This document shows positions 1,036 to 30,309 of a DNA stretch of 64,000 nucleotides, in pieces; the first letter of the stretch is position 1, and the number at the start of each line of letters is the position of its first letter. The DNA is taken from the IMG/VR virus record IMGVR_UViG_3300035182_002586, positions 186,001-250,000 of that record. One strand, written 5' to 3'. Below the pieces are notes generated by a model. The model was not told the DNA's origin and did not search any database. It saw nothing but the letters and a program-made list of their open reading frames with translations. The position numbers were made by a program, and so were the translations under genes.

Positions 1036-1071
1036 CGCCGCCGACGGGTCCACCAGTCGCTTGTCTTGGGA

Positions 1072-1251: not shown

Positions 1252-1265
1252 CGTGCTCACCCCTC

Positions 1266-2042: not shown

Positions 2043-2478
2043 CGCTCAGTGGACCGAGCAATACTCGCGTCCTGGCGCCCGCCTGCTGTGCGGGCGTCGT
2101 ACACCGGCACCAGGCTCATGTGGGGATCGCTGACGACGATTTCTGAGGCAGCGGACGACGATTCTGGATCAAGCAGCGGTTTTGGGGCAAAGCCCCCTCA
2201 TCATCGAGGCTGCGGGTCGCGTTCCTGGGATCTCCGAGGAGGACACCTACGACGCTCTCTACGAGACTGTCATCGCTGGCTCCATCGAGTGGGAGCCCTA
2301 CGTCCCCGATAGCGTCGAGCCCCTTGTCTGCCGCCTTCCGATGCAACGTGGGGGCGCGGCGTAGCCAGGTCTCCACTTCTTGTACGACGGCGCGCTCTGC
2401 TTCGACGGTGCTGTCCCGGACCGCTTTGCGAGCGGACTCGGGGTCGTCGAAGAGGTCGTCGAACGCGCGCGACACGGC

Positions 2479-3390
2479 TCAATGGCCGTACTGCATAAGG
2501 TCCAGTTCGAGGCGCCGGAGCTGATCGCACGCTTCGAGCCCCTTCGTCAGGTGCTCCGGGATGGCCGCGTAGCCGTAGTGGGCGCCAGCGAGCCCGCCCG
2601 CGACGGCAGCCGTCGTGTCGGTGTCCCCTCCTGCTCGGATGGCCGCTTGGACACAGGCCGTGTAGCTGTCCGTCAGAACGAGCGCCGCGATGGCTGCGGG
2701 CACCGTCTGGACGACGTGTGCCCCGGTCTGGAGGTCGGTCCCGAGTACGTCTTCGACGCGTCGGTTTTCTGCCTGCATGGCCTGGATCGAACGCAGGCCG
2801 GCGTAGATCTTGGACGTGCTCGGGAGATGGGTCAGGAGCCACGACAACAGGAGCTTCTTCGAGACCCCTGTGACGAGAAGCGCCACCGCTGCGGCGATCA
2901 CGGCCGACCCGTGCTGTGCCTCATCCGACTGGTGGGTGATGGTCGCGTCGAGGCGGGCGAACTCCGCCGCCGATGCCGGAAGCACGTGGTAGAAGGCGCC
3001 GAGCACTCCCGCACGCATGGCGGTGCCGTTGCCCTCCGCACCTTTGACCCCGCTGCTGTCCCACGGGGTCCCACGGGCAAGGCGTCCGAGGGCGTCTGCC
3101 GTCGCACGGCCCATTCCCCGTCTCTCTCCCGAGAGGAACCACTTCGTGTAGTGCGCGGCCGCGTCCACCGGGTCGTACCCGTGCCGTTCGAGCAGGGACT
3201 CGGCCAGACACTTCGACATCATCGTGTCGTCGGTCCACTGACCCGGAGCCAGCCCGTGGAAGCTGCTCGCCTGGTAGGAAAGGCCGTCCCACGCCAGCAG
3301 GCGGCTGTCGAGCATGTGGGCGGTCTCGAAGGGCATCCCGAGGGCATCGCCTACGGCAAGGCCCACGAGGGGGCTCGGGTTCTGTTTCAT
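2479..3390 (-). CDS. ADP-ribosylglycohydrolase (ARH/DraG family)
   Basis: Motifs GLAVGDALGMPFE, WTDDT, GNGTAMR, TH and GGDTDTTAAVAGGLAGA. Confidence 0.95.
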   Translation of the reverse strand: MKQNPSPLVGLAVGDALGMPFETAHMLDSRLLAWDGLSYQASSFHGLAPGQWTDDTMMSKCLAESLLERHGYDPVDAAAHYTKWFLSGERRGMGRATADALGRLARGTPWDSSGVKGAEGNGTAMRAGVLGAFYHVLPASAAEFARLDATITHQSDEAQHGSAVIAAAVALLVTGVSKKLLLSWLLTHLPSTSKIYAGLRSIQAMQAENRRVEDVLGTDLQTGAHVVQTVPAAIAALVLTDSYTACVQAAIRAGGDTDTTAAVAGGLAGAHYGYAAIPEHLTKGLEACDQLRRLELDLMQYGH

Positions 3391-3402
3391 GTTGCGGGGG
3401 AC

Positions 3403-3897
3403 TTACACCGCCGGGGCCGGTTCCAGCTCCGTGGCCTCCACCCAACACGGGGGGAGAGCCTTCTCACGGCCCTTCGCGCCGTCGAGGTTGGGGGCCATGA
3501 CCCGGTAGCTCAGGCCGTGCCCGTCGGACACGTCCATGATCACCACGGTCTGCCCTACGAGCGAAGGCATCGTCGCGGCCCGGTTGCGGCGCTCGCCTTC
3601 GACGTAGCCCCGATCCGCAACGTTCTCGTACCGCACGACACGGGCGCGATCGAGGACGTTCAGCCTTACGGTCACTGCCGGCTTCTTGTCTCGCCGCTCG
3701 ATGCGCGCCTGTGCGTCGGCCTTCGCTTCCTCCCCCGTCGTGTAGAGGGTCAGGTTCCGGTCCTCGGGCGCGCGTCCGAGGCAAGCGCTTCCGGCGGCCC
3801 AGTTGCAGAAGTCCTCTGGAGTGGCCTCGAAGCAGATGTCTGCCATCTCGGAGACGGGCGTGGGGTCGAGCACGGCCCACAGAGTGCTGATCTTCAT
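3403..3897 (-). CDS. hypothetical protein, possible C-terminal SH3-like domain
   Basis: 164-aa ORF with good codon bias and a GGTGTA motif just upstream of the ATG. Confidence 0.7.
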   Translation of the reverse strand: MKISTLWAVLDPTPVSEMADICFEATPEDFCNWAAGSACLGRAPEDRNLTLYTTGEEAKADAQARIERRDKKPAVTVRLNVLDRARVVRYENVADRGYVEGERRNRAATMPSLVGQTVVIMDVSDGHGLSYRVMAPNLDGAKGREKALPPCWVEATELEPAPAV

Positions 3898-3905
3898 GCT
3901 CTTCT

Positions 3906-4208
3906 CTACACCGACTTCTTCTTGGGCTTCGTCGCGTGCACCATGCGCCGGTGCAGCTCCATGTAGTCGGCCGTGATCCTCGTCAGGATGCTACCTGCAT
4001 CCCGTACCTGGTCGCCGATCTCCCCCAGGGAGGTAAGCGGTGCCTGGCTCGGCACGGCCTGCTGCTGGAGCTGCGTGTAGACGTGGAACATAGTCGTCTG
4101 TGAAGTCGCGTTACCCAAGTGCCGCACGAGGGTAGGGATGTTCTGCTCGATGCGGGCGATCAGGTCGGCGTCGGGGACTTCGCTCAGCGGGACACTCTTC
4201 TTGGGCAT
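3906..4208 (-). CDS. hypothetical protein
   Basis: ATG 4208 (MPKKSVP...) fills the gap between flanking genes. The longer ORF call overlaps the upstream gene. Confidence 0.65.
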   Translation of the reverse strand: MPKKSVPLSEVPDADLIARIEQNIPTLVRHLGNATSQTTMFHVYTQLQQQAVPSQAPLTSLGEIGDQVRDAGSILTRITADYMELHRRMVHATKPKKKSV

Positions 4209-4228
4209 GGGATCCGATCCCGGGCCGG

Positions 4229-5113
4229 CTAGTAGCCGAACCCGATGTAGTTGAAGTAGCTGTTCGACTTGTACGCGAGCTTGAGCGTCACGAGAGCCTC
4301 GTCCTGCCCCATCTTGGCCGCGTCGACGTGATCCTTGTAGTGGTAGCGGAGCTTCGCCTTCTTGGCGGCCTTGCGCATCTCGTCCTGGAGCACACGCGCC
4401 TTCGTGGCGGCCTCGGGGCCTTCCTTCGCCAGCTCGGCGAACTTCTGGCCCCACTCGGCGTAGAAGCTGTTCACGGCGTCCTCAGCGGCCTTCTCCTTGG
4501 CCTCACGCGCCGCCCGCTTCGCGTTCTCCGCGTCGCGCTTCGCCTGTGCGGCCGCCGCCCGCGCGTTCTTGCGCGCTTCCAGCTCAGCCTTCTCCATGAG
4601 GAGGACTTCTTCGGTCACCTCGCGGAGGGGCTTCGGCTCCCACCGGGCGATCATCCGGTCGAGGCGGTCGACCGAGATCTGGAGCATGCGCACGTGCGAC
4701 TCCGCCTGGAATTTTGCGTGGTCGAACAGTCTCTTCCACTCGTACCGGCGCGCCGGATCGGTCTCCGTGCTCGTGTACTCCTCGTACTTCGGCTCGATGA
4801 TGGTGCGGCGACCGTACTTGTACCCGTAGACAGACACGTCCTTGTGGAGGGTCTTGATACGCCCCTCGACGAGATCACTCAGGTGCAGCGCCGCGTTGGT
4901 GAGCTGCTGCGCGATGATCGCACGGTACTCTTGGGTGGCCTTGCACGAGACCTCGAAGGGCTCTCGACCCACGGCCCAACAGTCGCCGACGATGGACCCG
5001 TGCCCCGGGCGCTCGAACCCGTGGTGGACCATGGTGCCGCTCTGCACGTGGAACTCCCCTTCGCAGACGGGGCAGGTGCCGACGATGCCGATCCGGGTGT
5101 GCTGCTTGGCCAT
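4229..5113 (-). CDS. hypothetical phage protein with N-terminal Zn-binding motif (CPVC...HHG...C) and coiled coil
   Basis: ATG 5113 (MAKQHTR...) lies 4 nt after the -10-like element of the GATGGATC motif. Confidence 0.75.
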   Translation of the reverse strand: MAKQHTRIGIVGTCPVCEGEFHVQSGTMVHHGFERPGHGSIVGDCWAVGREPFEVSCKATQEYRAIIAQQLTNAALHLSDLVEGRIKTLHKDVSVYGYKYGRRTIIEPKYEEYTSTETDPARRYEWKRLFDHAKFQAESHVRMLQISVDRLDRMIARWEPKPLREVTEEVLLMEKAELEARKNARAAAAQAKRDAENAKRAAREAKEKAAEDAVNSFYAEWGQKFAELAKEGPEAATKARVLQDEMRKAAKKAKLRYHYKDHVDAAKMGQDEALVTLKLAYKSNSYFNYIGFGY

Positions 5114-5117
5114 GTTC

Positions 5118-5149
5118 CTACTACAACGGAACCCTCGGGGTGATCCATC
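5118..5149 (-). promoter_or_regulatory. promoter motif A (GATGGATC-N18-TAGTAG), leaderless geometry
   Basis: One of 5 copies with an identical 18-nt spacer. The hexamer ends 4 nt before ATG 5113. Confidence 0.65.
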
Positions 5150-5159
5150 CGGTCCCCTA

Positions 5160-5165
5160 CTTATC
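5160..5165 (+). promoter_or_regulatory. putative late-promoter motif CTTATC
   Basis: The same hexamer lies upstream of several structural/lysis genes. Here it is 14 nt before ATG 5180. Confidence 0.4.
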
Positions 5166-5179
5166 CATTTCCAGCAGGT

Positions 5180-6001
5180 ATGACGTTCCCGGAAGCAGGG
5201 GCCGCCCGCGAGGCATACATCATCGACCAGGTGCGCCAGGGGCGCTTCGAGGTCGAGTTCGCGACCATCACGTCCGACTACAACGGGCACCATGCGGAGT
5301 TCCAGGTCTTCGCGGACGCCCTCAAGGTTGACGGGGTGCGCGTCAACGTGAACGCACAGACGCAGCAGATCATCGCCGACATGACCGGGTGCATGCTGCT
5401 GACCCCGAAGCTCGCGGACCTGATCTGGATGCAGCGTCAGGTGACGTTGCCCCCGATGCCGCGTCCCATCACGTCGGCGACGGCGGCGATGATCGATCAG
5501 TCGAAGAAGATCGACGCAGCCCTCGCGAAGCTCGGGAACCCCAAGGGCCTCATCTGCACGGTCGGCAAGCACTGGGTCATCGACAACGACCTCTCACAGA
5601 CCAAGCTGATCTACGGCGTCCACGGGGCCGAGAACTACGGCTGGCACTTCGAGGGGGCGAGCTACCAGGGCATCGTCGGCGAGCAGATCGCCAGCGGCTT
5701 CAAGGACCCCAATGGACGCGTCTACCGGCTCATCCAGGGCCGTGGGTGGGCGCACAACATGTCCGAGGTCGACTACTCGCAGATCTGCATCTGCGTAGCG
5801 ATCATGTGCAAGGTCGACGGGCAGGACATGGACATCCGGGACCTGCTCCGTGATCCGAATCTCGCCCCCCTCGCCAGCCACAACGGCGTGATGAAGTTCT
5901 TTCGCCAGCCGGGTGTTCCGGAGCCGACCGACCACACGATCATCATGCCGATGATCACGATCACCGCGTCGCCGGGTTCGGACCCGGACACGTCCGCCTG
6001 A
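5180..6001 (+). CDS. uncharacterised enzyme-like protein, candidate cell-wall hydrolase
   Basis: 273 aa with conserved-looking motifs LLTPKLADLIW, GKHWV, NYGWH, IQG.G.AH...DYSQ and DP.LAPL.SH.G. The function is inferred. Confidence 0.6.
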   Translation: MTFPEAGAAREAYIIDQVRQGRFEVEFATITSDYNGHHAEFQVFADALKVDGVRVNVNAQTQQIIADMTGCMLLTPKLADLIWMQRQVTLPPMPRPITSATAAMIDQSKKIDAALAKLGNPKGLICTVGKHWVIDNDLSQTKLIYGVHGAENYGWHFEGASYQGIVGEQIASGFKDPNGRVYRLIQGRGWAHNMSEVDYSQICICVAIMCKVDGQDMDIRDLLRDPNLAPLASHNGVMKFFRQPGVPEPTDHTIIMPMITITASPGSDPDTSA

Positions 6002-6021
6002 CCCGGTGTAGCGTGCCCGCC

Positions 6022-6408
6022 GTGATCGACGACATATGCCGTGCTCTTCGTGCCTGCCGGCTCCGGTTTGGCGACGAAATCGAGCTGCAAGATGGGATCG
6101 AGCGCCTGTTCCAGGCCAGGGGGTTCCTCTACGAACGCGAGGCTCAGCTCGACGAGGCAGGCCGCGTCGACTTTCTCGTCTTCGGTTCCGGTGAGGTACA
6201 GGCCCCCAGCGTCGCCATCGGCGTCGAGGTGAAGATCAAGGGGTCTACGGCTGAGGTGACACGCCAACTCCACCGGTACGCCTCGACCGGGAAACTCTCG
6301 GGCCTCGTGCTGGCCACGACGCTGATGCGGCACGCCACACAGCTCCGGATGCCCTCCCTCGGGGGTGTGGAGTTCCGCTCCCTCTACCTCTCCGGATCTG
6401 CTTTCTGA
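6022..6408 (+). CDS. PD-(D/E)xK restriction-endonuclease-like nuclease
   Basis: E...RVDFLV...GVEVK...RQLHRYA (QxxxY). GTG 6022 is chosen because it lies 7 nt after GGTG-TAGCGT; 6013 is the alternative start. Confidence 0.75.
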   Translation: MIDDICRALRACRLRFGDEIELQDGIERLFQARGFLYEREAQLDEAGRVDFLVFGSGEVQAPSVAIGVEVKIKGSTAEVTRQLHRYASTGKLSGLVLATTLMRHATQLRMPSLGGVEFRSLYLSGSAF

Positions 6409-8144
6409 TGCCCCCTCCCGTTGTCGGTACGGCCGTCTACGACGAGGACCTACGTGTCTGGCGCATCCGGGCCGAGCCCCACGTGATGATGCGCCTCAAG
6501 CGTGTCTTCGGGCGCATCGCACAGAACGCCTTCGGGGAGGTGCGGCTGTCCGCCACCGAGGAGAACTGCCGGGAGCTTGCCTGGTTCACACAGCGCTTCG
6601 CATTCGACGTAGACCGCCCCGACATTCTCCAGGAGCGCGCAGAGGCTCACAGGGGCCGGGAAGACGCCCTGGCGGGCATCTTGTCGACCGATCACGTCCC
6701 TCCCCCGTTCCACACCCTCGCCCTTCCCGCTCGCGAGTACCAACGGCTCGCGGCTGAAATGGTCCTTCGCAACGGGTCCCTTCTGTTGGCGGATGATGTA
6801 GGTCTAGGGAAGACAGCCAGTTCGATCTGCGTCCTCACGGAAGCCAACGCGCTCCCTGCCCTCGTGGTGACCCTCGCTCACCTGCCTCGCCAGTGGGAGG
6901 CCGAGATCAAGAAGTTCGCCCCCCACCTCACGACCCACGTGGTCAAGAAGGGGACCCCCTACGACCTGACGAAAGCCCCTCGGGGTTCCAAGGCACCGAA
7001 CCGGTTCCCCGACGTGATCCTGCTGAACTACCACAAGCTCGCAGGGTGGGCGGACACTCTCGCCGAGAAGGTGAAGACCGTCATCTACGACGAGGCTCAG
7101 GAGCTTCGTCATGCGGGTACGAACAAGCACGCGGCCGCGCGACACATCTCCTCGGCCACGACCTACCGCATGGGGCTCACCGCGACCCCCATCTACAACT
7201 ACGGCGGGGAGATCTACAACGTCATCGACTCCATCAGGCCGGACTCCCTCGGGACACACGAAGAGTTCATGCGCGAGTGGTGCATCGATTGGGGGTACGG
7301 AGCCCGGCCCGGGGACAAGCCCAAGATCCGAGACCCCAAAGCGTTCGGCACCTACGTGCGCAGGTCGGGCCTCATGCTCCGTCGAACCCGCGCCGAGGTT
7401 GGGCGCGAGCTGCCTGCGTTGACCCGTGCCATCCATCACGTGGACGCGGACGAAGAAGCTCTCGACCGTGTGGGAGGCAGTGCCGCCGAGCTGGCGCGCA
7501 TCATCCTCAAGCAAGGGGAGAGCAAGCAGGGCGAGAAGTTCCTTGCGAGCGAGGAGTTCAACAACATCCTCAGGCAGGCAACGGGCATCGCCAAGGCTCC
7601 GTACGTCGCGGACTTCGTGCGGCTTCTCATCGAGAGTGGGGAGAAAGTCGTCCTCTACGGGTGGCACCGCGAGGTCTACTCCCTCTGGATGCACCGGCTC
7701 GCGGATCTCAGCCCGGTGATGTACACGGGGTCGGAGTCCTCTGCGCAGAAGGATGAGTCGAAGCGCAAGTTCCTTGCAGACGAGTCCCCACTCCTCATCA
7801 TCTCACTGCGTGCGGGCGCAGGGCTCGACGGGCTCCAGCACAAGTGCCGCACAGTCGTCTTCGGGGAGCTGGACTGGTCCCCGGGCGTCCACGAACAGTG
7901 CGTTGGACGCGTCTACCGCGACGGGCAGCCGGAACCTGTGCTCGCGTACTTCTTGCTCTCCGAGACTGGTAGCGATCCGGTCGTAGCAGACACGCTCGGG
8001 CTCAAGAAGCAGCAGATCGACGGGCTTCGCGATCCTTCGGCGGACATCGTGGAGACGCTCGAAGCGGATCCCGACCGCATCAAGAAGCTCGCGGAGGCGT
8101 TCTTGAAGCAGCGCGGGATCGCTCTACCCCCTTCCGGCCCCTAG
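6408..8144 (+). CDS. SNF2-family (SF2) helicase/ATPase
   Basis: LLADDVGLGKT, DEAQ, TATP, GAGLDGLQ, WSP...QCVGRVYRDGQ. TGATG overlap with the nuclease gene. Confidence 0.93.
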   Translation: MPPPVVGTAVYDEDLRVWRIRAEPHVMMRLKRVFGRIAQNAFGEVRLSATEENCRELAWFTQRFAFDVDRPDILQERAEAHRGREDALAGILSTDHVPPPFHTLALPAREYQRLAAEMVLRNGSLLLADDVGLGKTASSICVLTEANALPALVVTLAHLPRQWEAEIKKFAPHLTTHVVKKGTPYDLTKAPRGSKAPNRFPDVILLNYHKLAGWADTLAEKVKTVIYDEAQELRHAGTNKHAAARHISSATTYRMGLTATPIYNYGGEIYNVIDSIRPDSLGTHEEFMREWCIDWGYGARPGDKPKIRDPKAFGTYVRRSGLMLRRTRAEVGRELPALTRAIHHVDADEEALDRVGGSAAELARIILKQGESKQGEKFLASEEFNNILRQATGIAKAPYVADFVRLLIESGEKVVLYGWHREVYSLWMHRLADLSPVMYTGSESSAQKDESKRKFLADESPLLIISLRAGAGLDGLQHKCRTVVFGELDWSPGVHEQCVGRVYRDGQPEPVLAYFLLSETGSDPVVADTLGLKKQQIDGLRDPSADIVETLEADPDRIKKLAEAFLKQRGIALPPSGP

Positions 8145-8168
8145 CGGTGGCCGCGGGACCGTCGCGTC

Positions 8169-8441
8169 ATGCACTCGGACCCCGAACCGCGTGAAGCCGA
8201 GCGCGGACAGAATGCACGAGAGGGAGTGCCCGAACAGGTTGTGGAAGGACCACCTCCACCGGAGCCAGCACCGCCCCCTGAACCAGGTTGGGTGAGTGTG
8301 CGCGAGAAGCTCCAGTGCGTCGTGCCCTACGACACGAAAAGGCTCCCCTTGGAGTCCATCCCCTGGGTGGGTAAGGACAACCAGGGCGTGCTCCGTCTCC
8401 ATGTGAGACGTGTCGATGCACCTTACACAGGATTCGGGTAG
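8169..8441 (+). CDS. hypothetical Pro-rich small protein
   Basis: Has the best codon bias of the three overlapping frames and follows the helicase on the same strand. Confidence 0.45.
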   Translation: MHSDPEPREAERGQNAREGVPEQVVEGPPPPEPAPPPEPGWVSVREKLQCVVPYDTKRLPLESIPWVGKDNQGVLRLHVRRVDAPYTGFG

Positions 8442-8499
8442 GAGCAGAGGCCCTAGACGAACGAACACGAAGGGAGGGTGACACCTCTCGTGAGGTTCG

Positions 8500-8823: not shown

Positions 8824-8825
8824 GG

Positions 8826-9985: not shown

Positions 9986-10010
9986 CCCTCTCTGAGTACA
10001 CCAGCGAGAG

Positions 10011-10887: not shown

Positions 10888-10892
10888 GACGG

Positions 10893-13693: not shown

Positions 13694-13697
13694 GCTC

Positions 13698-13729
13698 CCT
13701 CTACCCCACGACCCCGGAGGCGATCCATC
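13698..13729 (-). promoter_or_regulatory. promoter motif A (GATGGATC-N18-TAGAGG), leaderless geometry
   Basis: Same geometry as the copy at 5118-5149. Confidence 0.65.
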
Positions 13730-13800
13730 CAGGGGGGTCGACATTTCCTCGGTTCGAGGAGGGGAGGGGGTTCCGGGGGCTCATAGCCCCATGTACACCG

Positions 13801-14250
13801 TCAGCCTTCCTTCGGGGGCTCAGCCTTCACCTCGGCCTCACGGGCCTCACGCTTCGCCTTGTCGAGCTTGCCGAGGCTCTTGATGCCCAAGGGAGTCCGC
13901 GGCCCCGTCTGCCCCCTCTGGAGGTCCTTGGTGACCTGCTGGACGCTCTGCTCTACCCTTTGGTCCCGACGAGCCCCTTCGAGCTTCTGGATCTCTGCGA
14001 GAGCGTAGTCCTCGGCCGCGACGACGAGCCGACCCAACGCAGCCGTGTCGATTCTCTTGAGGGTAGGCTGCCCCTGCCCCATGAAGGTCAGGGGCAGACG
14101 CCGGATCACCTTCTGTTGGTGGGTGCGGAAGCCGACCTCCAGGTTGTACTTCGGCTTCTCTGTCTTGAGGATCAGGACCGTTACGACGAGCCCTTGCTCC
14201 TCGAACTCCTTGACCTTCTCCCACTCCAAGTAGTCTTCTCGGTTGCGCAT
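13801..14250 (-). CDS. hypothetical basic protein
   Basis: 149-aa ORF with good codon bias. Confidence 0.7.
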   Translation of the reverse strand: MRNREDYLEWEKVKEFEEQGLVVTVLILKTEKPKYNLEVGFRTHQQKVIRRLPLTFMGQGQPTLKRIDTAALGRLVVAAEDYALAEIQKLEGARRDQRVEQSVQQVTKDLQRGQTGPRTPLGIKSLGKLDKAKREAREAEVKAEPPKEG

Positions 14251-14262
14251 GCGGGCGTCCTC

Positions 14263-14290
14263 AGGGTAGCTCGGGCGTGGTTTGGGTCAA
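14263..14290 (-). promoter_or_regulatory. possible sigma70-type promoter TTGACC-N16-TACCCT
   Basis: Read on the minus strand, 12 nt upstream of ATG 14250. Confidence 0.35.
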
Positions 14291-14295
14291 TCCAG

Positions 14296-14324
14296 CCTCA
14301 CCGAGGATCCTTTCTTCGGTGAGG
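14296..14324 (+). promoter_or_regulatory. stem-loop covering the SD of the 14332 gene
   Basis: CCTCACCGA / TCGGTGAGG perfect 9-bp inverted repeat, extendable with G-U pairs. The 3' arm is the SD-like GGTGAGG. Confidence 0.5.
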
Positions 14325-14331
14325 TTTGGTG

Positions 14332-14979
14332 ATGTCTCATCCACGTCGAATCGAGTGTTTCTTGATCGAGAGCACGAATGACCACTGGGTCTACCTGCGC
14401 CGGTACCGATCGACGTACCCTGAGGCCGGGCAGTGCCCTCGCGCCCCCGGTGCATACCACAACGCCGAAGCCCTGATCAGCGAAATCCAGGCAGAGATGC
14501 CTGTGTCGGGCGACCTGGGTGTGCCCCATGACGACCCGCGGTGGCCTCTCAAGTGTGATCACTGCGCCTACATCTTCCAGCCGGAGGACCAGTGGCAGGT
14601 CAACCACCGGCGGAAGTACGTGCACCAGGCCACAGGGCGAACCTACGCGCTCACCGGCCCCGAGAACTGCAACACAGACAAGTCCATCGACGCCCCCGTT
14701 GGAGCGCTCTGGCGTGCAGACTGGCTCGAAGATCTCGACTGGCGGGGCCCGGACGGCAAGAGCTACATCGTGCGGACACCCGGGGGCGACTGGACCATCG
14801 ATGGCCCGTCCACCACCGGCGGAGGGGTTCGTCAGTCCAAGGAGAGCGGTGGAGGCTGGACGCGCAGCGGGGAAGCACCCCACTTCACCGTCCGTCCCTC
14901 CATCCTGATCGGGAAGCAACCGAACGGGAGCTACACGTACCACGGCTTCATGAACGCCGGGTTCCTCGACGAGTGCTAG
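14332..14979 (+). CDS. Zn-binding protein with C-terminal DUF6527-like segment
   Basis: CDHC, and C-terminal WTRSG..P.FTVRPSILI......YHGF..AG.L resembling DUF6527. Confidence 0.6.
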   Translation: MSHPRRIECFLIESTNDHWVYLRRYRSTYPEAGQCPRAPGAYHNAEALISEIQAEMPVSGDLGVPHDDPRWPLKCDHCAYIFQPEDQWQVNHRRKYVHQATGRTYALTGPENCNTDKSIDAPVGALWRADWLEDLDWRGPDGKSYIVRTPGGDWTIDGPSTTGGGVRQSKESGGGWTRSGEAPHFTVRPSILIGKQPNGSYTYHGFMNAGFLDEC

Positions 14980-15389
14980 GTCTTCGGGGTCTCTACAGGG
15001 TCCCCGGCGAAGGTCAGGGGCTCTCCGTGCGGGTCCCACGGTAGTTGGACCCGCAGACCCTTCTTCTTGCCGTTGCACACGGTGCAACGCTCCAGCACGC
15101 CGCCGATGCACCCATTGTGAGGGACGCGCCCCACCCCCTGACAGGCGCGGCACGGCCCGTTCTCCATTCTGAGGGGGTTGTCCTCGTAGTAGTCGACGAG
15201 ACGTGTAGCTTCCTCCGTCGTCAGGTGGTCGTTGCTGCGAAAGAAGGCGATCGCAGCCTGTGCCCTTTCGTCTCGCCATGCACCCCACACGTGGTCGTAC
15301 TCCGCGAGCACGATCCGGGCGGGCGACCCTTCTGGCTCCAGGGCGATCTTGGCGCGCAGCTCAGTCCACTCGGCTTTGGAGAGGGGCAT
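14976..15389 (-). CDS. hypothetical protein with DnaJ-type CxxCxGxG zinc finger
   Basis: CRACQGVG...CTVCNGK; ATG lies 6 nt after GGTG-TAGAGC. Confidence 0.7.
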   Translation of the reverse strand: MPLSKAEWTELRAKIALEPEGSPARIVLAEYDHVWGAWRDERAQAAIAFFRSNDHLTTEEATRLVDYYEDNPLRMENGPCRACQGVGRVPHNGCIGGVLERCTVCNGKKKGLRVQLPWDPHGEPLTFAGDPVETPKT

Positions 15390-15395
15390 GGGCGG

Positions 15396-15420
15396 GCTCT
15401 ACACCGGGTTGGTGTAAGGG
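15396..15420. promoter_or_regulatory. back-to-back pair of GGTGTA motifs (TACACC-N5-GGTGTA) between divergent genes
   Basis: TACACC at 15400-15405 and GGTGTA at 15411-15416 within a 49-bp divergent gap. Confidence 0.6.
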
Positions 15421-15438
15421 GCCGTGGAGGAGAGCACC

Positions 15439-16131
15439 ATGCCCCACTACGGATCGACCGACAGCATCCACGTCCAGGCCAAGGGGAGCACCCCGACGGC
15501 CTTCGTCAGCGCGACCTTCAAGGCAAACATCAACACGGTCGCGAAGACGGGTCCGGCCGCCAAGGAAGCTGCCAAGGAGCGCATCGCGGCCATCTGGGAG
15601 GTCCTCAAGGCGTTCGGTCCGGCCGCCGGCATCGACACCGACCGTCTGCGCACGACGTTCGCCGTGGACAGTAGCAAGGAGCACGACCGAACCACCGGGG
15701 AGCTGCGGTTCCTCGGCTACAAGGCGGCCTACTCGATCACCTTCACGGCCAAGAACGTGCTCGAAGCAACGCGCCTCCACGACGCGCTCACGAGCATCGA
15801 GGGCGTCGAGAGCCCCTCGCCCGTCTTCAACATCAACGAGAGCCCCGAGATCTATGCGCAGGCGTTCAAGGTGGCGGCCGATGCTGCGCGGGTGAAGTTC
15901 CGCCTTCAGTGCGAAGCGCTCGGGCTGGATCCGAACGCCTACGAGCCGGCGACCTGGACCATCGAGGAAGAGCAGCAGCACGGCAAGACGCTCTCGGTGG
16001 GCAACGGCCCCAAGGCGTCGGCGGTGGGCATGGAGCCCGGCAAGGCCACTCTGGCGATGACCGTCACCTTCGTGTTCGTCGCCAAGAAGGGCTCGACGAT
16101 CGCCGTGACCGGCAGCGGTCTGCCTGGCTGA
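15439..16131 (+). CDS. SIMPL (DUF541) domain protein
   Basis: IHVQAKGS...GIDTDRLRT...GYKAAYSITFT...A...AADAAR.K...ALGL...PGKATLAMTVTFVF. GGAGG SD present; no signal peptide. Confidence 0.8.
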   Translation: MPHYGSTDSIHVQAKGSTPTAFVSATFKANINTVAKTGPAAKEAAKERIAAIWEVLKAFGPAAGIDTDRLRTTFAVDSSKEHDRTTGELRFLGYKAAYSITFTAKNVLEATRLHDALTSIEGVESPSPVFNINESPEIYAQAFKVAADAARVKFRLQCEALGLDPNAYEPATWTIEEEQQHGKTLSVGNGPKASAVGMEPGKATLAMTVTFVFVAKKGSTIAVTGSGLPG

Positions 16132-16138
16132 ACTCCCG

Positions 16139-16171
16139 GAGAGGGGCTCTACGTGAGTTCAAGCCCCTCTC
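16139..16171. terminator. inverted repeat at the junction of convergent genes
   Basis: GAGAGGGGCT / AGCCCCTCTC 10-bp stem; no U-tract. Confidence 0.45.
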
Positions 16172-16550
16172 GCAAGTCGTGTGCGATGCTACGGAAGTGG
16201 GCCCGGGTCTCACGGCAGATGCGGTCCCCGGGCTTCACAGCTTCTCGACATGCTCGGGGCCGGTCCTCGTAGACCGAGCACGACGTGTTCTGGAGGAGGT
16301 TGCCGCGCAGGGCAACACAGGCGCAGATCTGAGCCCCTTTGAAGGGGCCCTGTCGCTGTGTGGCCCATCTCGTTCGGATGGCCCCCTCGCCAGCCATGTC
16401 CGACTGGTACACGTGGAGTCGAACAAACTTGGGGCCTAGACGCACCACATCTTCCGCCGTGACGTCACAGAGTGCAGGTTGATCTTCCGTGGAGACGCAG
16501 CAGGCACCGCACGTCAGACAGGTCTCTGCGGTGATGGTCTCCCGTGCCAC
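16149..16550 (-). CDS. YkgJ-family cysteine-cluster (CxxCxxCC) protein
   Basis: CLTCGACC...CVAL...CSVYEDRPRACR. GTG 16550 overlaps the upstream TAG. Confidence 0.85.
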   Translation of the reverse strand: MARETITAETCLTCGACCVSTEDQPALCDVTAEDVVRLGPKFVRLHVYQSDMAGEGAIRTRWATQRQGPFKGAQICACVALRGNLLQNTSCSVYEDRPRACREAVKPGDRICRETRAHFRSIAHDLREGLELT

Positions 16551-16879
16551 TATCGGCCGTCCTGCGTGGGGTGCCACCCCATCGAGATCTCCAGCTCCTC
16601 GGCCACGTCTGCGGCCTGGAGGAGCATCCGAGCGAGGACGCGCGCCGTTCGCGGGCTCATCCCACGCTTGACCCCCTTCTCCTGGCCAATGAGGACGACC
16701 GGGGCGTAGGCCACACGGTGCTTGTTCGGAGCACCGTTGGGCAACGTCTCGGGGGCGTCCATCTGCCCTACGTACACATCGAGCGGCTCCCCCTTGCTCC
16801 ACTCGGGGTGTGTCATCATCGGGCGTTCGTTGATCTTGCGGGTCTTGATCCGCTGATACTTGCGTGTGTCCTCCGCCAT
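16550..16879 (-). CDS. hypothetical protein
   Basis: ATG 16879 with GGAG SD and an upstream TGG-TAGGAT extended -10-like element. Confidence 0.65.
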   Translation of the reverse strand: MAEDTRKYQRIKTRKINERPMMTHPEWSKGEPLDVYVGQMDAPETLPNGAPNKHRVAYAPVVLIGQEKGVKRGMSPRTARVLARMLLQAADVAEELEISMGWHPTQDGR

Positions 16880-16947
16880 AGTCTTCGCTCCAGTCCAAGA
16901 TATCCTACCACGGTAGCGCGGCCGTGTACCCCTAGAACCGTCGGACG

Positions 16948-18396
16948 CTACTTCGCACTGTACTTCCGAAAGAAGTCGGGGTCTTTGAGGGCAAGGGACA
17001 CCATCTTCGCGCCGAGACGGGAGAGGGCGTGGTCGAACTCGTCCGTCAGATGCCCCCCGTACTCGTGCGACAGCTCGTGGATCAGGAGGTCGTTCACCTC
17101 TTCGGTCGCCCCCCGCTCGAACCACTTCTTGCCGAGGCGGTCGTGATTGAACGTGAGCTGCGCGCCGCCGTAGTTCGCGGCCCACCGGTCCGTCATGCGC
17201 CCTCGCTCGAAGTGCACGTCGACGGAACGGCCGAGGAGCTTCCACGCCAGCTCGTGGGCGTAGGTCGCCAGGTTCGTCATCCCGGGGGTCCACTCGGACT
17301 CGGGGATGTAGCGAGCGTCCCTCGCATCCGGGTCGTTGCTGTAAGGCTTCGGCGTAGGCGCGATGCGCCCCGAGGGAAGGGTAGCGCCAGTGCTACGGAT
17401 GTTCCTCCAGGCGTCCTTCGAGAACGTTCCGCCGGGGATCACTGTGTACCCGTCGGCCACGAGGCGGCGATTCGCCTCCGGATCCGTGGGGTCGAAGATG
17501 GCGCGCTTCTCCCCAAACTGGTGGGTGAGCACCGTGTCCACGGCTTCGGCGACGACACGCTCATCCGCGAGTGCTTCCTGGATCGCCGGGAGTGCGGCCT
17601 GGTCGGGCCGAAGGGTCTCGTGTATCTCGTTCAGCACGAGGACCGCCAGCTCCCGCGCATAGGCGGGAGTCACGTTGTCCCGATCCGAGTTGAGAGGGAT
17701 CTTCTGCATGACCTCGACCGTCCACGGGAGGTCAGTCTCGACGACGGGGATCCCCATCTCGTAGATACGCGAGACGTTATCGATCGGCTCGTACACACGG
17801 ATGGTGGTCTTGCGCGCCGTCTTGCGCAGGTAGCCTTCCGCGTCAGCGATCTCCGTGGGCAACGTGGCCTCGAACGTCCGAAGAGGGGTCCGGATGGGGA
17901 TGACTTCGTTGTTCAGCGTCGTGGGGACCGGAGGAAGCAGCAGCTTCGCGGCCCGGATCACTTGCGCGTACTCGTCGCGCGTCATGCGCAACACGCAGTA
18001 GAAGATAGAGCCTCGTTCGAGATGGTTCCGAACAGGGCGCCGGCCGTTCTTGTCGAAGGCGAAGCCCCCCTTGGTCGAGAGGACCTCGGCCTTCTCGCAT
18101 GCGGCGAGCACGAGCTTCTCGCCGAGGTTGAAACGCCCTCGCTTCGTGGGGTCGCTTTTCTTGTTCGATTCCGCGTACAGCGTGAACGCGTGCGTCAGGT
18201 CCGCGAAGCCATCCGGGTCGTCGTCCTCGACGAGCATCGTCACGAGAGGGCGCCCCTCGACAGGCTCCATCTTCACCGTGACTTTGCTGGTCTTGGTGTC
18301 CCACGCGTTCTGGACCAGCTCGTAGAGGATGAACTCCATCCCCTTACGCTTGAGCAACTTGGCCAGACCCTCACGGTCAACTTCGAACCAACCCAT
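16948..18396 (-). CDS. GHKL-family ATPase with C-terminal HExxH (zincin-like) motif
   Basis: ELVQNAWD (N box), VEDDDPDG (G1), GRFNLGEK (G2); C-terminal LLIHELSH...H...F. Confidence 0.8.
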   Translation of the reverse strand: MGWFEVDREGLAKLLKRKGMEFILYELVQNAWDTKTSKVTVKMEPVEGRPLVTMLVEDDDPDGFADLTHAFTLYAESNKKSDPTKRGRFNLGEKLVLAACEKAEVLSTKGGFAFDKNGRRPVRNHLERGSIFYCVLRMTRDEYAQVIRAAKLLLPPVPTTLNNEVIPIRTPLRTFEATLPTEIADAEGYLRKTARKTTIRVYEPIDNVSRIYEMGIPVVETDLPWTVEVMQKIPLNSDRDNVTPAYARELAVLVLNEIHETLRPDQAALPAIQEALADERVVAEAVDTVLTHQFGEKRAIFDPTDPEANRRLVADGYTVIPGGTFSKDAWRNIRSTGATLPSGRIAPTPKPYSNDPDARDARYIPESEWTPGMTNLATYAHELAWKLLGRSVDVHFERGRMTDRWAANYGGAQLTFNHDRLGKKWFERGATEEVNDLLIHELSHEYGGHLTDEFDHALSRLGAKMVSLALKDPDFFRKYSAK

Positions 18397-18438
18397 GGAT
18401 CCTCCTACACCGCGGGGGCAGCGAAGCCTCCCGTACCC

Positions 18439-18470
18439 CCTCTACAACGTGACCTTGGGGGTGATCCATC
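18439..18470 (-). promoter_or_regulatory. promoter motif A (GATGGATC-N18-TAGAGG)
   Basis: 18-nt spacer; a GGTGTA motif follows at 18406-18411. Confidence 0.65.
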
Positions 18471-18555
18471 GGCGTAGGGGGACGTAGGGATCAACGCGAC
18501 AGTTTGCGTCTACCGTCGCGGTTCGCGGATCTTCCGATGGAGACGCAAGAGTGAG

Positions 18556-19191
18556 ATGTCAGATTGGACGAGCCTCATCCAGAACGCCGTCGCGGGCCTC
18601 ATCACTGGGGGTGCCGGGGCGACGAGCACATTCCTCGCTGTTTTCAAGGACATCAAGAAGCGCCTGGACAGCGTGGAGAAGACTGTAGGGTCAGCCGGAT
18701 CCTCCATCGAACCCCGCACTGGCTTCTTCTTGCTCCTCGGGCAGCTCACCGAGGCCATGGACAAGGCCAACGAGGAGATCCGGAAGCTCCGTCGAGGGTT
18801 CGACAACCTCGAAGACGACCCCCCGGATTGGTTCACCCGCGCGATGAACCGTCGTCCGAGCTACGCGCCGGACCACTCACAGGACTACGAACGGATCGAG
18901 AAGATCGCGAAGAGCGCTCTCGACCGAGCGAAGCAGGTCGAGAGCGAAGTCGAGGAGATGCGCAAGGACGTGGACCGTATGAGCCGCGACTTCGTGAGTC
19001 AAGACAGCTTCGACCACGACTCCGCGAAGCGTCTCGAAGACATCCGGAAGCTCCAGGAGAACCTGTCCACCGTGAACGGGTTCCTCCGTGGAGTCATGGC
19101 GACCCTCGGGTACATCGACACACCGCCTCAGCCGCCGCCTCAGCCTCAGCCTCAGCCCACGACCCCGCAGCTTCCTCCGAGGAGAAAGTGA
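18556..19191 (+). CDS. hypothetical protein with N-terminal hydrophobic segment and coiled coil
   Basis: 211 aa with good codon bias; C-terminal PQ repeat. Confidence 0.75.
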   Translation: MSDWTSLIQNAVAGLITGGAGATSTFLAVFKDIKKRLDSVEKTVGSAGSSIEPRTGFFLLLGQLTEAMDKANEEIRKLRRGFDNLEDDPPDWFTRAMNRRPSYAPDHSQDYERIEKIAKSALDRAKQVESEVEEMRKDVDRMSRDFVSQDSFDHDSAKRLEDIRKLQENLSTVNGFLRGVMATLGYIDTPPQPPPQPQPQPTTPQLPPRRK

Positions 19192-19193
19192 TC

Positions 19194-19451
19194 ATGAGCG
19201 CCAAGGAAGAGAACGACGCAATGCAGAAGCTCGCAGACGAGTCGGCCAAGACCGTCGAGTTGAGCCGCAAGTTCCACGAGGCGATCCGGAAGAGCGGGCC
19301 CCCGCCGAAGCGGGACAAGGACAGCACCCCGGTGCGTATCGCACCGCTCTACACGCCCTCGCCCATGATGTCCCCTTTCGCGAACGCAGCCGCAGCCGCA
19401 GCCCTGCTCGCGGACACCGCCGCAGCCGTCGCTGTGGTCGCGAAGAAGTAG
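19194..19451 (+). CDS. hypothetical protein with Ala-rich C-terminus
   Basis: ATG 19194 with GGAG SD just after the upstream stop. Confidence 0.6.
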   Translation: MSAKEENDAMQKLADESAKTVELSRKFHEAIRKSGPPPKRDKDSTPVRIAPLYTPSPMMSPFANAAAAAALLADTAAAVAVVAKK

Positions 19452-19508
19452 TCGCCGCTTCTCCCCTCCCCTAGGCCCGGAGGCCAGCAGCCTCCGGGGT
19501 GAAGACCC

Positions 19509-19976
19509 ATGTACTCGAACGCGAACCAGATCATCCCGAACTTGTGGCAGGGAGCTGCACCCCCCGTCGGGGGCACGATCGCAGCCGCCGGGTTCACGAT
19601 GCTGGTGTTGTGCGCGCAAGAGTACCAGCCCGCAGCCGTTTACTTTCCTGGGGTCGAGGTGGTCCACGCCGCCAACGATGACAACTTCGAGGCGGTGACA
19701 CGAGAGCAGGCTGCCACCGCCCTTGCGGCCGCACGTCGGGTCGATGCAGCTCTCCGGCAAGGTCAGAAGGTCCTCGTCACGTGTCGCATGGGCCTCAACC
19801 GGTCGGGTCTCGTGACCGGGATCGCGCTCCACTTGTTTACGGGCCTCCCCGGTGTGGTCTGCGTCCGGAAGATTCGCCAGGCTCGACGCGGTGCGCTTGG
19901 AAACCCCATCTTCCGCGCGATGATCGGCCGTCTCGGGGCCGTGCAGCAGACCGACGACTGGTTCGAGGGGTACTAG
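19509..19976 (+). CDS. dual-specificity/tyrosine protein phosphatase
   Basis: IIPNLWQG, DD loop, VLVTCRMGLNRSG (CX5R), IRQAR...NP.F. Confidence 0.9.
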   Translation: MYSNANQIIPNLWQGAAPPVGGTIAAAGFTMLVLCAQEYQPAAVYFPGVEVVHAANDDNFEAVTREQAATALAAARRVDAALRQGQKVLVTCRMGLNRSGLVTGIALHLFTGLPGVVCVRKIRQARRGALGNPIFRAMIGRLGAVQQTDDWFEGY

Positions 19977-19989
19977 CGCAGACCCTCTG

Positions 19990-20021
19990 GATGGATCATG
20001 ATACCCCTCCCATTGTAGAGA
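19990..20021 (+). promoter_or_regulatory. promoter motif A (GATGGATC-N18-TAGAGA), leaderless geometry
   Basis: 18-nt spacer; the hexamer ends 5 nt before ATG 20027. Confidence 0.6.
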
Positions 20022-20026
20022 GTGTC

Positions 20027-20194
20027 ATGTCCCGCAAGAACAAGGTCGAGATCATCAAGGTCGAAGAGCCCACGCCCCGCAGCGCCGTGGCGCTCGCGAT
20101 GCAGCGCCGCTACGGCTACGGCGTGAAGATCTTCAAGGATCGCCGCGCCCCCCGCGGCGGCGCCAAGCGCCAGGATCACCACGAGGGTTGGTGA
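20027..20194 (+). CDS. small basic hypothetical protein (55 aa)
   Basis: Very strong GC3 bias, own promoter motif, KDRRAPRGG motif. Confidence 0.7.
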   Translation: MSRKNKVEIIKVEEPTPRSAVALAMQRRYGYGVKIFKDRRAPRGGAKRQDHHEGW

Positions 20195-20217
20195 TTGGCT
20201 CGGGTGGTGTAACTGAA

Positions 20218-30277: not shown

Positions 30278-30309
30278 GATGGATCGCCCCCGGGGTCGCG
30301 CTGTACAGG
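30278..30309 (+). promoter_or_regulatory. promoter motif A (GATGGATC-N18-TACAGG)
   Basis: 18-nt spacer, followed by AGGAG SD and ATG 30326. Confidence 0.65.

What the first reader, a model, noticed from the sequence alone, without database searches (positions are those of the whole stretch)
2100..20211. GGTGTA motif at early-gene junctions, many with leaderless geometry
GGTGTA on the transcribed strand occurs at 2100, 3404, 3907, 6005, 9997, 10911, 13794, 15400, 15411, 18406 and 20206, almost always in or beside a short intergenic gap. If TAxxxx is read as a -10 hexamer, the start codon follows after 5-9 nt for genes at 3390, 3897, 6022, 9985, 15389 and 18396. At 3404 and 3907 the motif is built from the last Val codon plus the stop of the upstream gene (GTG TAA, GTG TAG). 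No common -35 is visible. Inference: a phage-specific, -10-only promoter class that makes largely monocistronic, often leaderless mRNAs, possibly read by a phage sigma factor.
Basis: partly seen in the sequence, partly recalled or inferred. Interest (0 to 1): 0.6.

Follow-up and report, generated by a model that had tools for sequence, protein, structure and literature searches.

The report
Leaderless-gene promoter motif of huge phages
A strict 7-base signal (C-GGTGTA) sits 9-12 bases in front of the ATG of roughly a quarter of the genes of a 530-620 kb uncultured phage and of its relatives; it is most likely a one-box promoter that makes mRNAs with no or almost no leader, which points to a private gene-expression regime in these giant phages.

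Summary
All 11 GGTGTA sites exist. In the whole 529-kb record, GGTGTA is the most enriched hexamer upstream of independently called starts (115 vs 6.8 expected). It peaks sharply with the motif starting at -18..-15 and is the top intergenic hexamer of all 4096 (217 vs 27 expected).

Motif genes start with ATG in 90% of cases (others 59%). Only 14% carry a Shine-Dalgarno-like word (others 40%). Nothing is conserved at -35. Twenty-two back-to-back pairs lie between divergent start codons and none in the convergent orientation.

The motif and its spacing recur in related huge-phage contigs. In a complete 407-kb relative it is again the top upstream hexamer.

A second promoter class shares the GTA core: GATGGATC, 16-17 nt, GTAG, 7 nt, ATG. 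A third candidate is YTTATC.

The genome has no RNA polymerase of its own that I could detect. It does encode a divergent sigma-like protein conserved in the relative.

No RNA data exist, so transcription starts are inferred. Verdict: a -10-only promoter for leaderless or near-leaderless mRNAs, and a new variant of a known kind.

The parts
3404..3409 (-). Class 1 motif GGTGTA, built from the last Val codon and TAA stop of gene 3403-3897. It lies 13 nt before the ATG (3390) of the ADP-ribosylglycohydrolase gene 2479-3390.
3907..3912 (-). Class 1 motif (GTG + TAG stop of the upstream gene), 9 nt before the ATG (3897) of gene 3403-3897.
6005..6010 (+). Class 1 motif 11 nt before the GTG (6022) of the ~129-aa gene that precedes the SNF2/DEAD helicase 6408-8144. 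The same junction carries GGTGTA in three related contigs.
9997..10002 (-). Class 1 motif 11 nt before the ATG (9985) of gene 9083-9985.
15400..15405 (-). Class 1 motif 10 nt before the ATG (15389) of gene 14976-15389. It is the left half of a back-to-back pair (TACACC-N5-GGTGTA).
15411..15416 (+). Class 1 motif, right half of the back-to-back pair. It is followed by GGAGGAG and an ATG at 15439 (SIMPL/DUF541 gene, to 16131), so this is a leadered case.
18406..18411 (-). Class 1 motif 9 nt before the ATG (18396) of the 482-aa gene 16948-18396. It lies inside the leader of the class 2 promoter at 18443-18469, so the two promoters are in tandem.
2100..2105 (-). GGTGTA without a start codon at the typical distance. 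The sites at 10911-10916(-), 13794-13799(-) and 20206-20211(+) are the same. They may be leadered promoters or chance copies.
5122..5148 (-). Class 2 promoter (ATGGATC, 17 nt, GTAG, 7 nt, ATG) of gene 4229-5113.
13702..13728 (-). Class 2 promoter of the SNF2 helicase gene 11435-13693. A two-box promoter of the same build, followed directly by ATG, precedes the orthologous helicase in seven related contigs.
18443..18469 (-). Class 2 promoter upstream of gene 16948-18396. Here no ATG follows at once, so the transcript is leadered and contains the 18406 motif and a GGAGGA.
19991..20017 (+). Class 2 promoter of the 55-aa gene 20027-20194.
30279..30305 (+). Class 2 promoter of gene 30326-31348, leadered with an AGGAG word.
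5161..5165 (+). Third motif (C)TTATC, 14 nt before the ATG of gene 5180-6001. The same word lies upstream of genes 25018-25434(-) at 25465-25469, 32688-40070(-) at 40105-40109 and 53988-54338(-) at 54379-54383.

Best explanation
C-GGTGTA-(G/C) is a one-box, -10-like promoter element of a clade of huge phages. Its TA lies about 10-13 nt (mostly 11-12) before the start codon. This is where the -10 box of a leaderless gene sits, with 5-8 nt between the 'hexamer' and the first base of the ATG. RNA polymerase would therefore start at, or 1-4 nt before, the ATG, and the mRNA would be translated without a Shine-Dalgarno sequence.

The 5' part (C-GGT) would stand in for a -35 box. A second class uses the same GTA core together with a real upstream box (GATGGATC in this phage). 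Two hybrid sites place GGTGTA exactly in the -10 register of that class.

The reader of the motif is inferred to be the host core polymerase carrying a phage-specified sigma-like factor. The candidate is the 393-aa protein at record position 93299-94480, which is itself behind a class 2 promoter.

Shown: the motif, its position, its association with ATG and with lack of SD, its conservation, and the sigma-like genes. Inferred: that it is a promoter, where transcripts start, and which factor reads it.
For: 1. Position and enrichment. GGTGTA is the top upstream hexamer (115 vs 6.8 expected), and 84 genes have it starting at -18..-15. It is the top intergenic hexamer of all 4096, with 217 of 332 copies touching the 19% of the genome that is non-coding, against 27 expected. 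No degenerate variants are enriched.

2. Leaderless signature. 83 of 92 motif genes start with ATG, against 59% of the others. An SD-like word occurs in 14% against 40%. Another 52 sites precede an ATG-ORF that my gene caller mis-started or missed.

3. No other promoter. The logo is flat from -45 to -2. There are no sigma-70 consensus promoters in 1-20000 (0 found, 1.4 expected).

4. DNA-level arrangement. There are 22 TACACC-Nk-GGTGTA pairs with k<=22 (mode 3-7), flanked by CAT and ATG about 10 nt away. No convergent pair has k<=22. The motif is most frequent at divergent genes with gaps under 40 nt (12 of 24).

5. Link to a two-box promoter. About 70 sites read ATGGATC, 16-17 nt, GTAG, 7 nt, ATG, and all 49 called genes of this class start with ATG. 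Hybrids ATGGATC-N13/14-GGTGTA put the GTA in the same register.

6. Conservation. The same motif and spacing occur in contigs whose helicase is 44-57% identical. The orthologous junction before the 129-131-aa gene is conserved in 4 genomes. A complete 407-kb relative with 58% GC gives GGTGTA as top hexamer de novo (46 vs 4.1), peaking at -16/-15. There, 22% of sites precede an ATG-ORF against 2.6% for permuted words.

7. Candidate reader. I detected no polymerase. A sigma-like protein is present: Atlas neighbours are viral Sigma70_r2 clusters (0.94); 15 of 35 family members hit Pfam Sigma70_r2; the fold search is dominated by sigma factors at Z 5.5-7.3; and an orthologue is present in the 407-kb relative. 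A separate protein carries sigma region 4 (63 bits).

8. Precedent. A -10 motif 6-7 bp before the ORF has been shown by experiment to drive leaderless genes without a -35 box in Deinococcus-Thermus (PMC12340547).
Against: No transcription start is mapped, because only DNA metagenomes hold this sequence.

The sixth place of the TAxxxx hexamer is T in only 11 of 92 sites, so a standard primary sigma would not be expected to read it.

The GTA of class 1 sits 1-4 nt further from the ATG than in class 2. One enzyme with one start-site rule would therefore give 1-4-nt leaders rather than none.

Some motif genes keep an SD word right after the motif (for example 18406), which a truly leaderless mRNA does not need.

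The sigma-like protein itself is below Pfam's cut-off (E 0.024). Foldseek and a PDB profile search gave nothing significant, and the structural Z values are in the range the tool calls 'middling'.

The host is unknown, so a host factor cannot be excluded.
Confidence: 0.65

Rival explanations
1. It is a promoter, but it is read by a host sigma factor with an unusual -10 preference, not by a phage factor. The motif is then invariant among these phages because their hosts share that sigma.
For: GGTGTA is invariant across relatives, while the upstream box of class 2 changes from phage to phage: GATGGATC, AGTGGAT, ATGGACC, TTTGATC, GGTTGATTC, GTTGAAA. I detected no phage polymerase. Leaderless -10-only promoters are a host trait in some phyla (PMC12340547).
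Against: The word has no T at hexamer position 6, unlike every described primary-sigma -10 box. The phage and its 407-kb relative both carry a conserved sigma-like gene. The host is unidentified, so nothing positive supports this reading; one search gave only generic helicases.
Confidence: 0.2
2. It acts in the RNA as a start-associated translation signal, like the SAS of Cluster K mycobacteriophages. It would be a site for a ribosomal or phage factor, lying in the leader of transcripts that begin further upstream.
For: The motif keeps a fixed distance to the start codon and shows a strong ATG bias. These are the same two features reported for SAS, where 80 of 93 sites precede ATG (PMC3203893).
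Against: Nothing else is conserved within 45 nt upstream that could be the promoter such genes would still need. In back-to-back pairs with 1-7 nt between the two motifs, each leader would have to start inside the opposing motif or gene. The motif has no SD core and lies 9-12 nt from the start, while normal SD words in this genome start at about -11 to -9. Two tRNA genes, which are not translated, have it 19-21 nt upstream. Hybrid sites place it in the -10 register of a two-box promoter.
Confidence: 0.08
3. It is a cleavage site for a sequence-specific endoribonuclease that cuts long transcripts into short-leader, single-gene mRNAs.
For: The motif lies at gene junctions, often overlapping the upstream stop codon.
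Against: It is more frequent at divergent genes (23%) than at co-directional ones (12.5%), and most frequent in divergent gaps under 40 nt. There is no upstream transcript to cut in those places. The link to the two-box class and the hybrid sites also argues against it.
Confidence: 0.04
4. It is an operator or 'stoperator' for a phage DNA-binding regulator, not a polymerase recognition site.
For: Pairs TACACC-N-GGTGTA are inverted repeats. [quoted passage not shown]
Against: The spacing between the two halves varies from 1 to 22 nt. Most sites are single. A 6-7-bp asymmetric site is short for a regulator. The sharp distance to ATG, the ATG bias and the loss of SD are not expected of operators.
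Confidence: 0.03

Closest known systems
The -10 motif (TANNNT) adjacent to ORFs that drives leaderless genes in Deinococcus-Thermus (PMC12340547). A similar pattern exists in Actinobacteria (leaderless transcriptome of M. tuberculosis, PMC3898074, title only).
   Same: A single -10-like box, no -35 needed, ending about 6-7 bp before the start codon, with no SD. About a third of genes are affected there and about a quarter here.
   Different: The word is C-GGTGTA-G/C. Its 5' half is invariant, and it has no T at the last hexamer place. It is a phage-clade signal, and its reader is unknown.
Middle and late promoters of Thermus phages phiYS40 and P23-45 (Sevostyanova 2007, listed in PMC12340547; Berdygulova 2011). 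Details are from my memory, as the papers are not held.
   Same: As I recall, these are phage promoters without a -35 box, and many phiYS40 middle and late transcripts are leaderless. The best phage-database hits of the window's helicase are Thermus and Rhodothermus phages.
   Different: As I recall, those promoters are read by the host primary sigma and keep a normal -10 box. Here the box is non-canonical, and the phages are 3-4 times larger and only distantly related (about 30% identity).
T4 late promoters (TATAAATA read by gp55). From general knowledge.
   Same: One strict 8-bp box at -10, no -35, read by a very divergent phage sigma-like protein. The T4 gp45-dependent activation complex is among the fold matches of the sigma-like protein (7d7d_F, Z 6.1).
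   Different: The word is different. T4 late mRNAs are leadered. No clamp dependence can be inferred here.
ECF-sigma promoters (-35 GGAAC-like, 16-17 nt, -10 CGT-like). From general knowledge.
   Same: Class 2 has two boxes at a fixed 16-17 nt, with an invariant G-T at -11/-10 from the ATG. It reads CGTAG or CGTTG in relatives. ECF sigmas dominate the fold matches.
   Different: The upstream box lacks the AAC hallmark and varies by phage. Class 1 has no upstream box at all.
Start-associated sequences (SAS/ESAS) of Cluster K mycobacteriophages (PMC3203893).
   Same: A short asymmetric word in one orientation just before the start codons of many non-structural genes. It has a strong ATG bias, is conserved across subclusters, and its function is unproven.
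   Different: SAS is 13 bp, contains the AGGAG core, lies 3-7 bp from the start, and was proposed to act in translation. GGTGTA has no SD core, lies 9-12 nt away, and motif genes lack SD.

Membership tests
Standard sigma-70-type -10 box (TATAAT / TANNNT) | A at hexamer position 2 | tested here: met
   Invariant by construction of the motif (GGTG-TA).
Standard sigma-70-type -10 box (TATAAT / TANNNT) | T at hexamer position 6 | tested here: not met
   T in 11 of 92 aligned sites, G in 45.
Standard sigma-70-type -10 box (TATAAT / TANNNT) | Transcription starts 5-8 nt after the hexamer | not testable with these tools
   No RNA runs hold the sequence. The start codon does lie 5-8 nt after TAxxxx in the main peak.
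Extended -10 promoters (TGn + hexamer) | TG one base upstream of the hexamer | tested here: not met
   In GGTGTA the TG abuts the TA with no base between. The conserved extension is C-GGT.
Leaderless-gene promoters (-10 box adjacent to the ORF) | Box ends about 5-8 nt before the start codon | tested here: met
   The motif starts at -18..-15 in 84 genes, and at -16/-15 in the 407-kb relative.
Leaderless-gene promoters (-10 box adjacent to the ORF) | No Shine-Dalgarno sequence, and ATG strongly preferred | tested here: met
   SD-like word in 14% vs 40% of genes; ATG in 90% vs 59%; ATG in 75% vs 36% in the relative.
Leaderless-gene promoters (-10 box adjacent to the ORF) | The 5' end of the mRNA is the start codon | not testable with these tools
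   Needs 5'-end mapping.
ECF-type two-box promoters (applies to class 2) | Two conserved boxes with a fixed 16-17 nt spacer | tested here: met
   GTA lies 23-24 nt after the A of ATGGATC in 67 of 95 sites. The same build occurs in relatives.
ECF-type two-box promoters (applies to class 2) | AAC in the -35 box | tested here: not met
   The boxes are GATGGATC, TTTGATC, GTTGAAA and others.
SAS of Cluster K mycobacteriophages | 13-bp word containing the AGGAG core, 3-7 bp from the start | tested here: not met
   The word is 6-8 bp with no SD core and lies 9-12 nt from the start. The definition is from PMC3203893.
Sigma-70 family (for the 393-aa protein, record 93299-94480) | Region 2 recognisable by profile | tested here: inconclusive
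   The protein itself scores E 0.024, below the cut-off. 15 of 35 family members hit Sigma70_r2, best E 4.9e-6. TIGR02937 gives E 0.0019.
Sigma-70 family (for the 393-aa protein, record 93299-94480) | Sigma-2 and sigma-4 folds | tested here: inconclusive
   The model has pLDDT 80. About 22 of the top 30 VIA matches are sigma factors, at Z 5.5-7.3 and rmsd about 3 A over 70-90 residues for domain 2. Foldseek found nothing significant.
Phage-encoded RNA polymerase (multi-subunit or T7-like) | Catalytic domains or the DxDGD metal motif | tested here: not met
   No Rpb2_6 or T7 RNA_pol hit in six frames; the T7 control genomes did not ring either. No convincing DxDGD motif in ORFs of at least 250 aa. 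Very divergent enzymes could be missed.

The most novel reading that the evidence does not exclude
A whole clade of 400-760 kb phages runs an orthogonal expression regime. A phage sigma with a split region 2 would read a non-canonical one-box promoter (C-GGTGTA, no T at -7), and a related two-box promoter would place the start exactly on the ATG. Hundreds of phage genes would then be expressed as leaderless mRNAs that bypass Shine-Dalgarno-dependent initiation. This would let the phage favour its own translation when it alters host initiation.
Probability: 0.3. Interest if true: 0.75.

Novelty: new variant of a known kind. Interest (0 to 1): 0.6.

Why it matters
Huge phages are known almost only from metagenomes, and their gene regulation is largely unknown.

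A strict, clade-wide promoter word with leaderless geometry offers several uses:
- It corrects gene starts. In this record it relocated or added about 50 starts.
- It delimits phage DNA. The motifs run on into the 91 kb that was trimmed as 'host'.
- It helps to sort genes into regulatory classes.
- It makes one hypothesis directly testable: these phages combine their own sigma factor with SD-independent translation.

It also adds a non-canonical -10 word (no T at the last place) to the range of sequences that sigma-like factors may read.

Tried and rejected
- Megablast of 18 kb against the phage collection found no match.
- A single-protein scan of IMG/VR with the helicase found nothing. The alignment scan then worked.
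- The genome-contig scan with the helicase alignment gave only generic SNF2 helicases at 25-30% identity, so there is no host clue.
- RNA evidence is unavailable. Only DNA metagenomes (sediment, microbial mat, groundwater, hot spring) hold the stretch.
- Laying contigs of four runs showed a strain 4-14% diverged. The difference table is cut (466 rows not shown), so conservation of the motifs within the population could not be judged.
- Six-frame searches for Sigma70_r2, Rpb2_6 and T7 RNA polymerase gave no hit. The T7 control rang nowhere, so that blank is weak.
- A DxDGD scan gave nothing convincing.
- Foldseek against the PDB and a PDB profile search for the sigma-like family gave nothing significant.
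- Pfam and PHROGs left most window proteins, including four giant ones, unnamed.
- The phiYS40 paper is not held.
- Literature searches for the motif strings found only primers.
- Terminator-like sites are not enriched, so 'monocistronic' could not be tested.
- A codon artefact (Tyr-Thr or Gly-Val) was considered and rejected. Coding copies (115) are at or below the mean for permuted words (146), while intergenic copies are about 8-fold above expectation.

Full report
WHAT THE WINDOW IS

The window is bases 186001-250000 of a 528,957-bp IMG/VR record with 64% G+C, labelled 'provirus'.

The record carries 54 tRNA genes and a tmRNA in arrays. Most of its proteins have no family. It has no near relative among sequenced phages.

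It is the last 529 kb of a 620,031-bp metagenome contig. All three upstream motifs described below continue into the 91 kb that was cut off as 'host'. The provirus label therefore looks like a trimming artefact, and the whole contig looks like one huge phage genome.

CHECK OF THE OBSERVATION

All 11 GGTGTA sites exist at the stated places. The window has 30 copies against 15.0 +/- 3.6 in shuffles.

The GTG start at 6022 is supported by orthologues that begin with the same codons.

Four listed sites (2100, 10911, 13794, 20206) have no start codon at the typical distance. 15411 is followed by GGAGGAG and an ATG 22 nt on, so it is leadered.

GENOME-WIDE TEST

I called 622 genes from codon usage alone, without using any upstream signal. 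The results were:
- In the 40 nt before these starts, GGTGTA is the most enriched of all hexamers: 115 copies against 6.8 expected.
- 84 genes have the motif starting at -18, -17, -16 or -15, against about one copy per position elsewhere.
- The aligned sites read C-GGTGTA-(G/C), and nothing is conserved from -45 to -2.
- No one-mismatch variant is enriched at that position. The remaining genes show Shine-Dalgarno words instead.
- A further 52 sites precede an ATG-initiated ORF that my caller had mis-started or missed.
- 217 of the 332 copies touch the 19% of the genome that is non-coding, against 27 expected. That is the highest score of all 4096 hexamers. The 115 coding copies are at or below what permuted words give.

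SIGNS OF LEADERLESS EXPRESSION

Motif genes start with ATG in 83 of 92 cases, against 59% for other genes. They carry a GGAG or GAGG word in 14% of cases, against 40%.

The TA of the motif lies 10-13 nt before the start codon. This leaves 5-8 nt after a notional TAxxxx hexamer. That is the distance at which a -10 box adjacent to an ORF drives leaderless genes, without a -35 box, in Deinococcus-Thermus, where it was shown by experiment (PMC12340547).

PROMOTER RATHER THAN RNA SIGNAL

Four observations speak for a DNA-level promoter:

1. Genes with the motif have no other conserved element within 45 nt upstream that could serve as their promoter. The region also has no sigma-70 consensus promoters.

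2. There are 22 back-to-back pairs TACACC-Nk-GGTGTA with k of 1-22 (mostly 3-7). Each is flanked by CAT and ATG about 10 nt away. No convergent pair occurs at such distances. The start codons of these divergent genes are only about 35-45 bp apart. The two promoters must therefore lie in that gap, where the motifs are the only shared sequence. The motif is most frequent in exactly these gaps (12 of 24 gaps under 40 nt), and it is 1.8 times more frequent at divergent than at co-directional genes.

3. A second class of about 70 sites has a plainly promoter-like, two-box build: (G)ATGGATC, 16-17 nt, (T/G)GTAG, 7 nt, ATG. Every called gene of this class starts with ATG. Two hybrid sites, at record positions 447408(-) and 491770(+), combine ATGGATC with GGTGTA and put its GTA in the same register as the GTA of class 2.

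4. Two tRNA genes, which are not translated, have GGTGTA 19-21 nt before their 5' ends. This is weak support, since about 0.4 such cases are expected by chance.

CONSERVATION

The window's SNF2 helicase has more than 100 homologues at 42-57% identity, on contigs of up to 763 kb.

In six such contigs, GGTGTA again lies 9-14 nt before the starts of 13-27% of the genes as called by the database. The junction before the 129-131-aa gene next to the second helicase carries it in four genomes. Two more distant contigs lack it.

In a complete 407-kb relative with terminal repeats and 58% G+C, I repeated the whole analysis from scratch:
- GGTGTA is again the top upstream hexamer (46 vs 4.1), with its peak at -16/-15.
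- 22% of its copies precede an ATG-ORF, against 2.6% for permuted words.
- Back-to-back pairs occur, but close convergent pairs do not.

The helicase gene has a class 2 promoter followed directly by ATG in seven relatives. The upstream box differs from phage to phage: GATGGAT, AGTGGAT, ATGGACC, TTTGATC, GGTTGATTC, GTTGAAA. The -10 part keeps G-T at -11/-10 from the ATG.

WHO READS IT

I found no RNA polymerase and no standard sigma region 2.

A 393-aa protein at record position 93299-94480 is the best candidate for a phage sigma:
- It has weak hits to sigma profiles.
- Its nearest Atlas clusters are viral Sigma70_r2 proteins.
- It belongs to a family of 155 representatives, of which 15 of 35 sampled members hit Pfam Sigma70_r2.
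- Its model (pLDDT 80) matches sigma factors in about 22 of the top 30 structural rows, at Z 5.5-7.3. An extra domain of about 110 residues is inserted in region 2.
- Foldseek and PDB profile searches were blank.

The gene lies behind a class 2 promoter in this phage, and an orthologue lies behind a two-box promoter of the same build (GGTTGAAG with CGTTGTAG) in the 407-kb relative. A cascade in which class 2 comes first is therefore plausible.

Another protein, at 479185-479790, has a clear sigma region 4. Which factor reads which class is not known. The host is unknown too, so a host sigma remains a live rival.

OPEN POINTS

- The GTA of class 1 sits 1-4 nt further from the ATG than that of class 2. 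If one enzyme reads both classes, class 1 mRNAs would have leaders of 1-4 nt.
- Some motif genes keep an SD word. At 18406 this fits a tandem arrangement, where a leadered transcript from the class 2 promoter at 18443-18469 would use the SD.
- 'Early' and 'monocistronic' remain untested. Both classes are rare or absent in the long one-strand blocks of large genes (record 220-280 kb and 360-400 kb). Some of those large genes instead carry the third word, YTTATC.

COMPARISON AND NOVELTY

The logic is known: a one-box promoter next to the ORF giving leaderless mRNA, and phage-specific promoter words read by divergent sigma-like factors.

What is new:
- the word itself, which breaks the T-at-position-6 rule;
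- its strictness;
- its conservation across a clade of huge uncultured phages;
- its pairing with a two-box class fixed on the ATG;
- the scale, at about a quarter to a third of the genes.

Searches of the paper library for the motif strings found nothing relevant. I file it as a new variant of a known kind.

Noticed in passing
window 5122-5148(-), 13702-13728(-), 18443-18469(-), 19991-20017(+), 30279-30305(+); about 70 sites in the record, dense at 416-524 kb: A second, two-box promoter class: (G)ATGGATC, 16-17 nt, (T/G)GTAG, 7 nt, ATG. It always precedes ATG. The upstream box differs between related phages, while G-T at -11/-10 is kept.
   Followed up: yes
window 5161-5165(+), 25465-25469(-), 40105-40109(-), 54379-54383(-); 23 called genes in the record: A third upstream word, YTTATC. 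It lies either about 14 nt before the start or 30-45 nt before it with an SD word. It occurs upstream of several giant genes (2460 aa, 1403 aa) and may be the promoter class of the large structural-looking operons.
   Followed up: partly
record G000:C1 123254-176528 (outside the window): 54 tRNA genes and a tmRNA (tag ANDNGTVITALKAAA), all on one strand. They include a tRNA with anticodon TTA, which would read the TAA stop codon.
   Followed up: no
L103:12764-21797 (contig bases upstream of the record's start): The record is the last 529 kb of a 620,031-bp contig. The trimmed 'host' part has the same G+C, phage-like genes (an RF-1-domain protein, endonuclease VII, a histone-deacetylase-like protein) and all three motifs. 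The 'provirus' call is probably wrong.
   Followed up: partly
window 25756-30096(-), 32688-40070(-), 48468-53984(-), 58707-63650(-): Four giant ORFs (1446, 2460, 1838 and 1647 aa) on one strand with no Pfam family. Two shorter neighbours (724 and 862 aa) also had no PHROG hit. No class 1 or class 2 promoter lies among them.
   Followed up: partly
record G000:C1 479185-479790(+) and 71524-72171(-): Two small proteins with sigma region 4 only (63 and 43 bits). The open frame of the first overlaps the preceding 273-aa gene by about 250 nt, so its true start is unclear.
   Followed up: partly
record G000:C1 447408(-) and 491770(+): Hybrid promoters in which the class 2 upstream box is combined with GGTGTA as the -10 part. 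The second precedes a 221-aa partial paralogue of the sigma-like protein.
   Followed up: partly
record G000:C1 139956 and 150448(+): GGTGTA lies 19 and 21 nt before the 5' ends of tRNA-Thr(TGT) and tRNA-Ser(TGA). The latter heads a three-tRNA cluster after a 560-nt gap.
   Followed up: partly
window 13781-13799(-): GGTGTA is followed after 1 nt by a three-codon mini-ORF (ATG GGG CTA TGA), about 100 nt upstream of the helicase start and just before its class 2 promoter. Its purpose is unknown.
   Followed up: no
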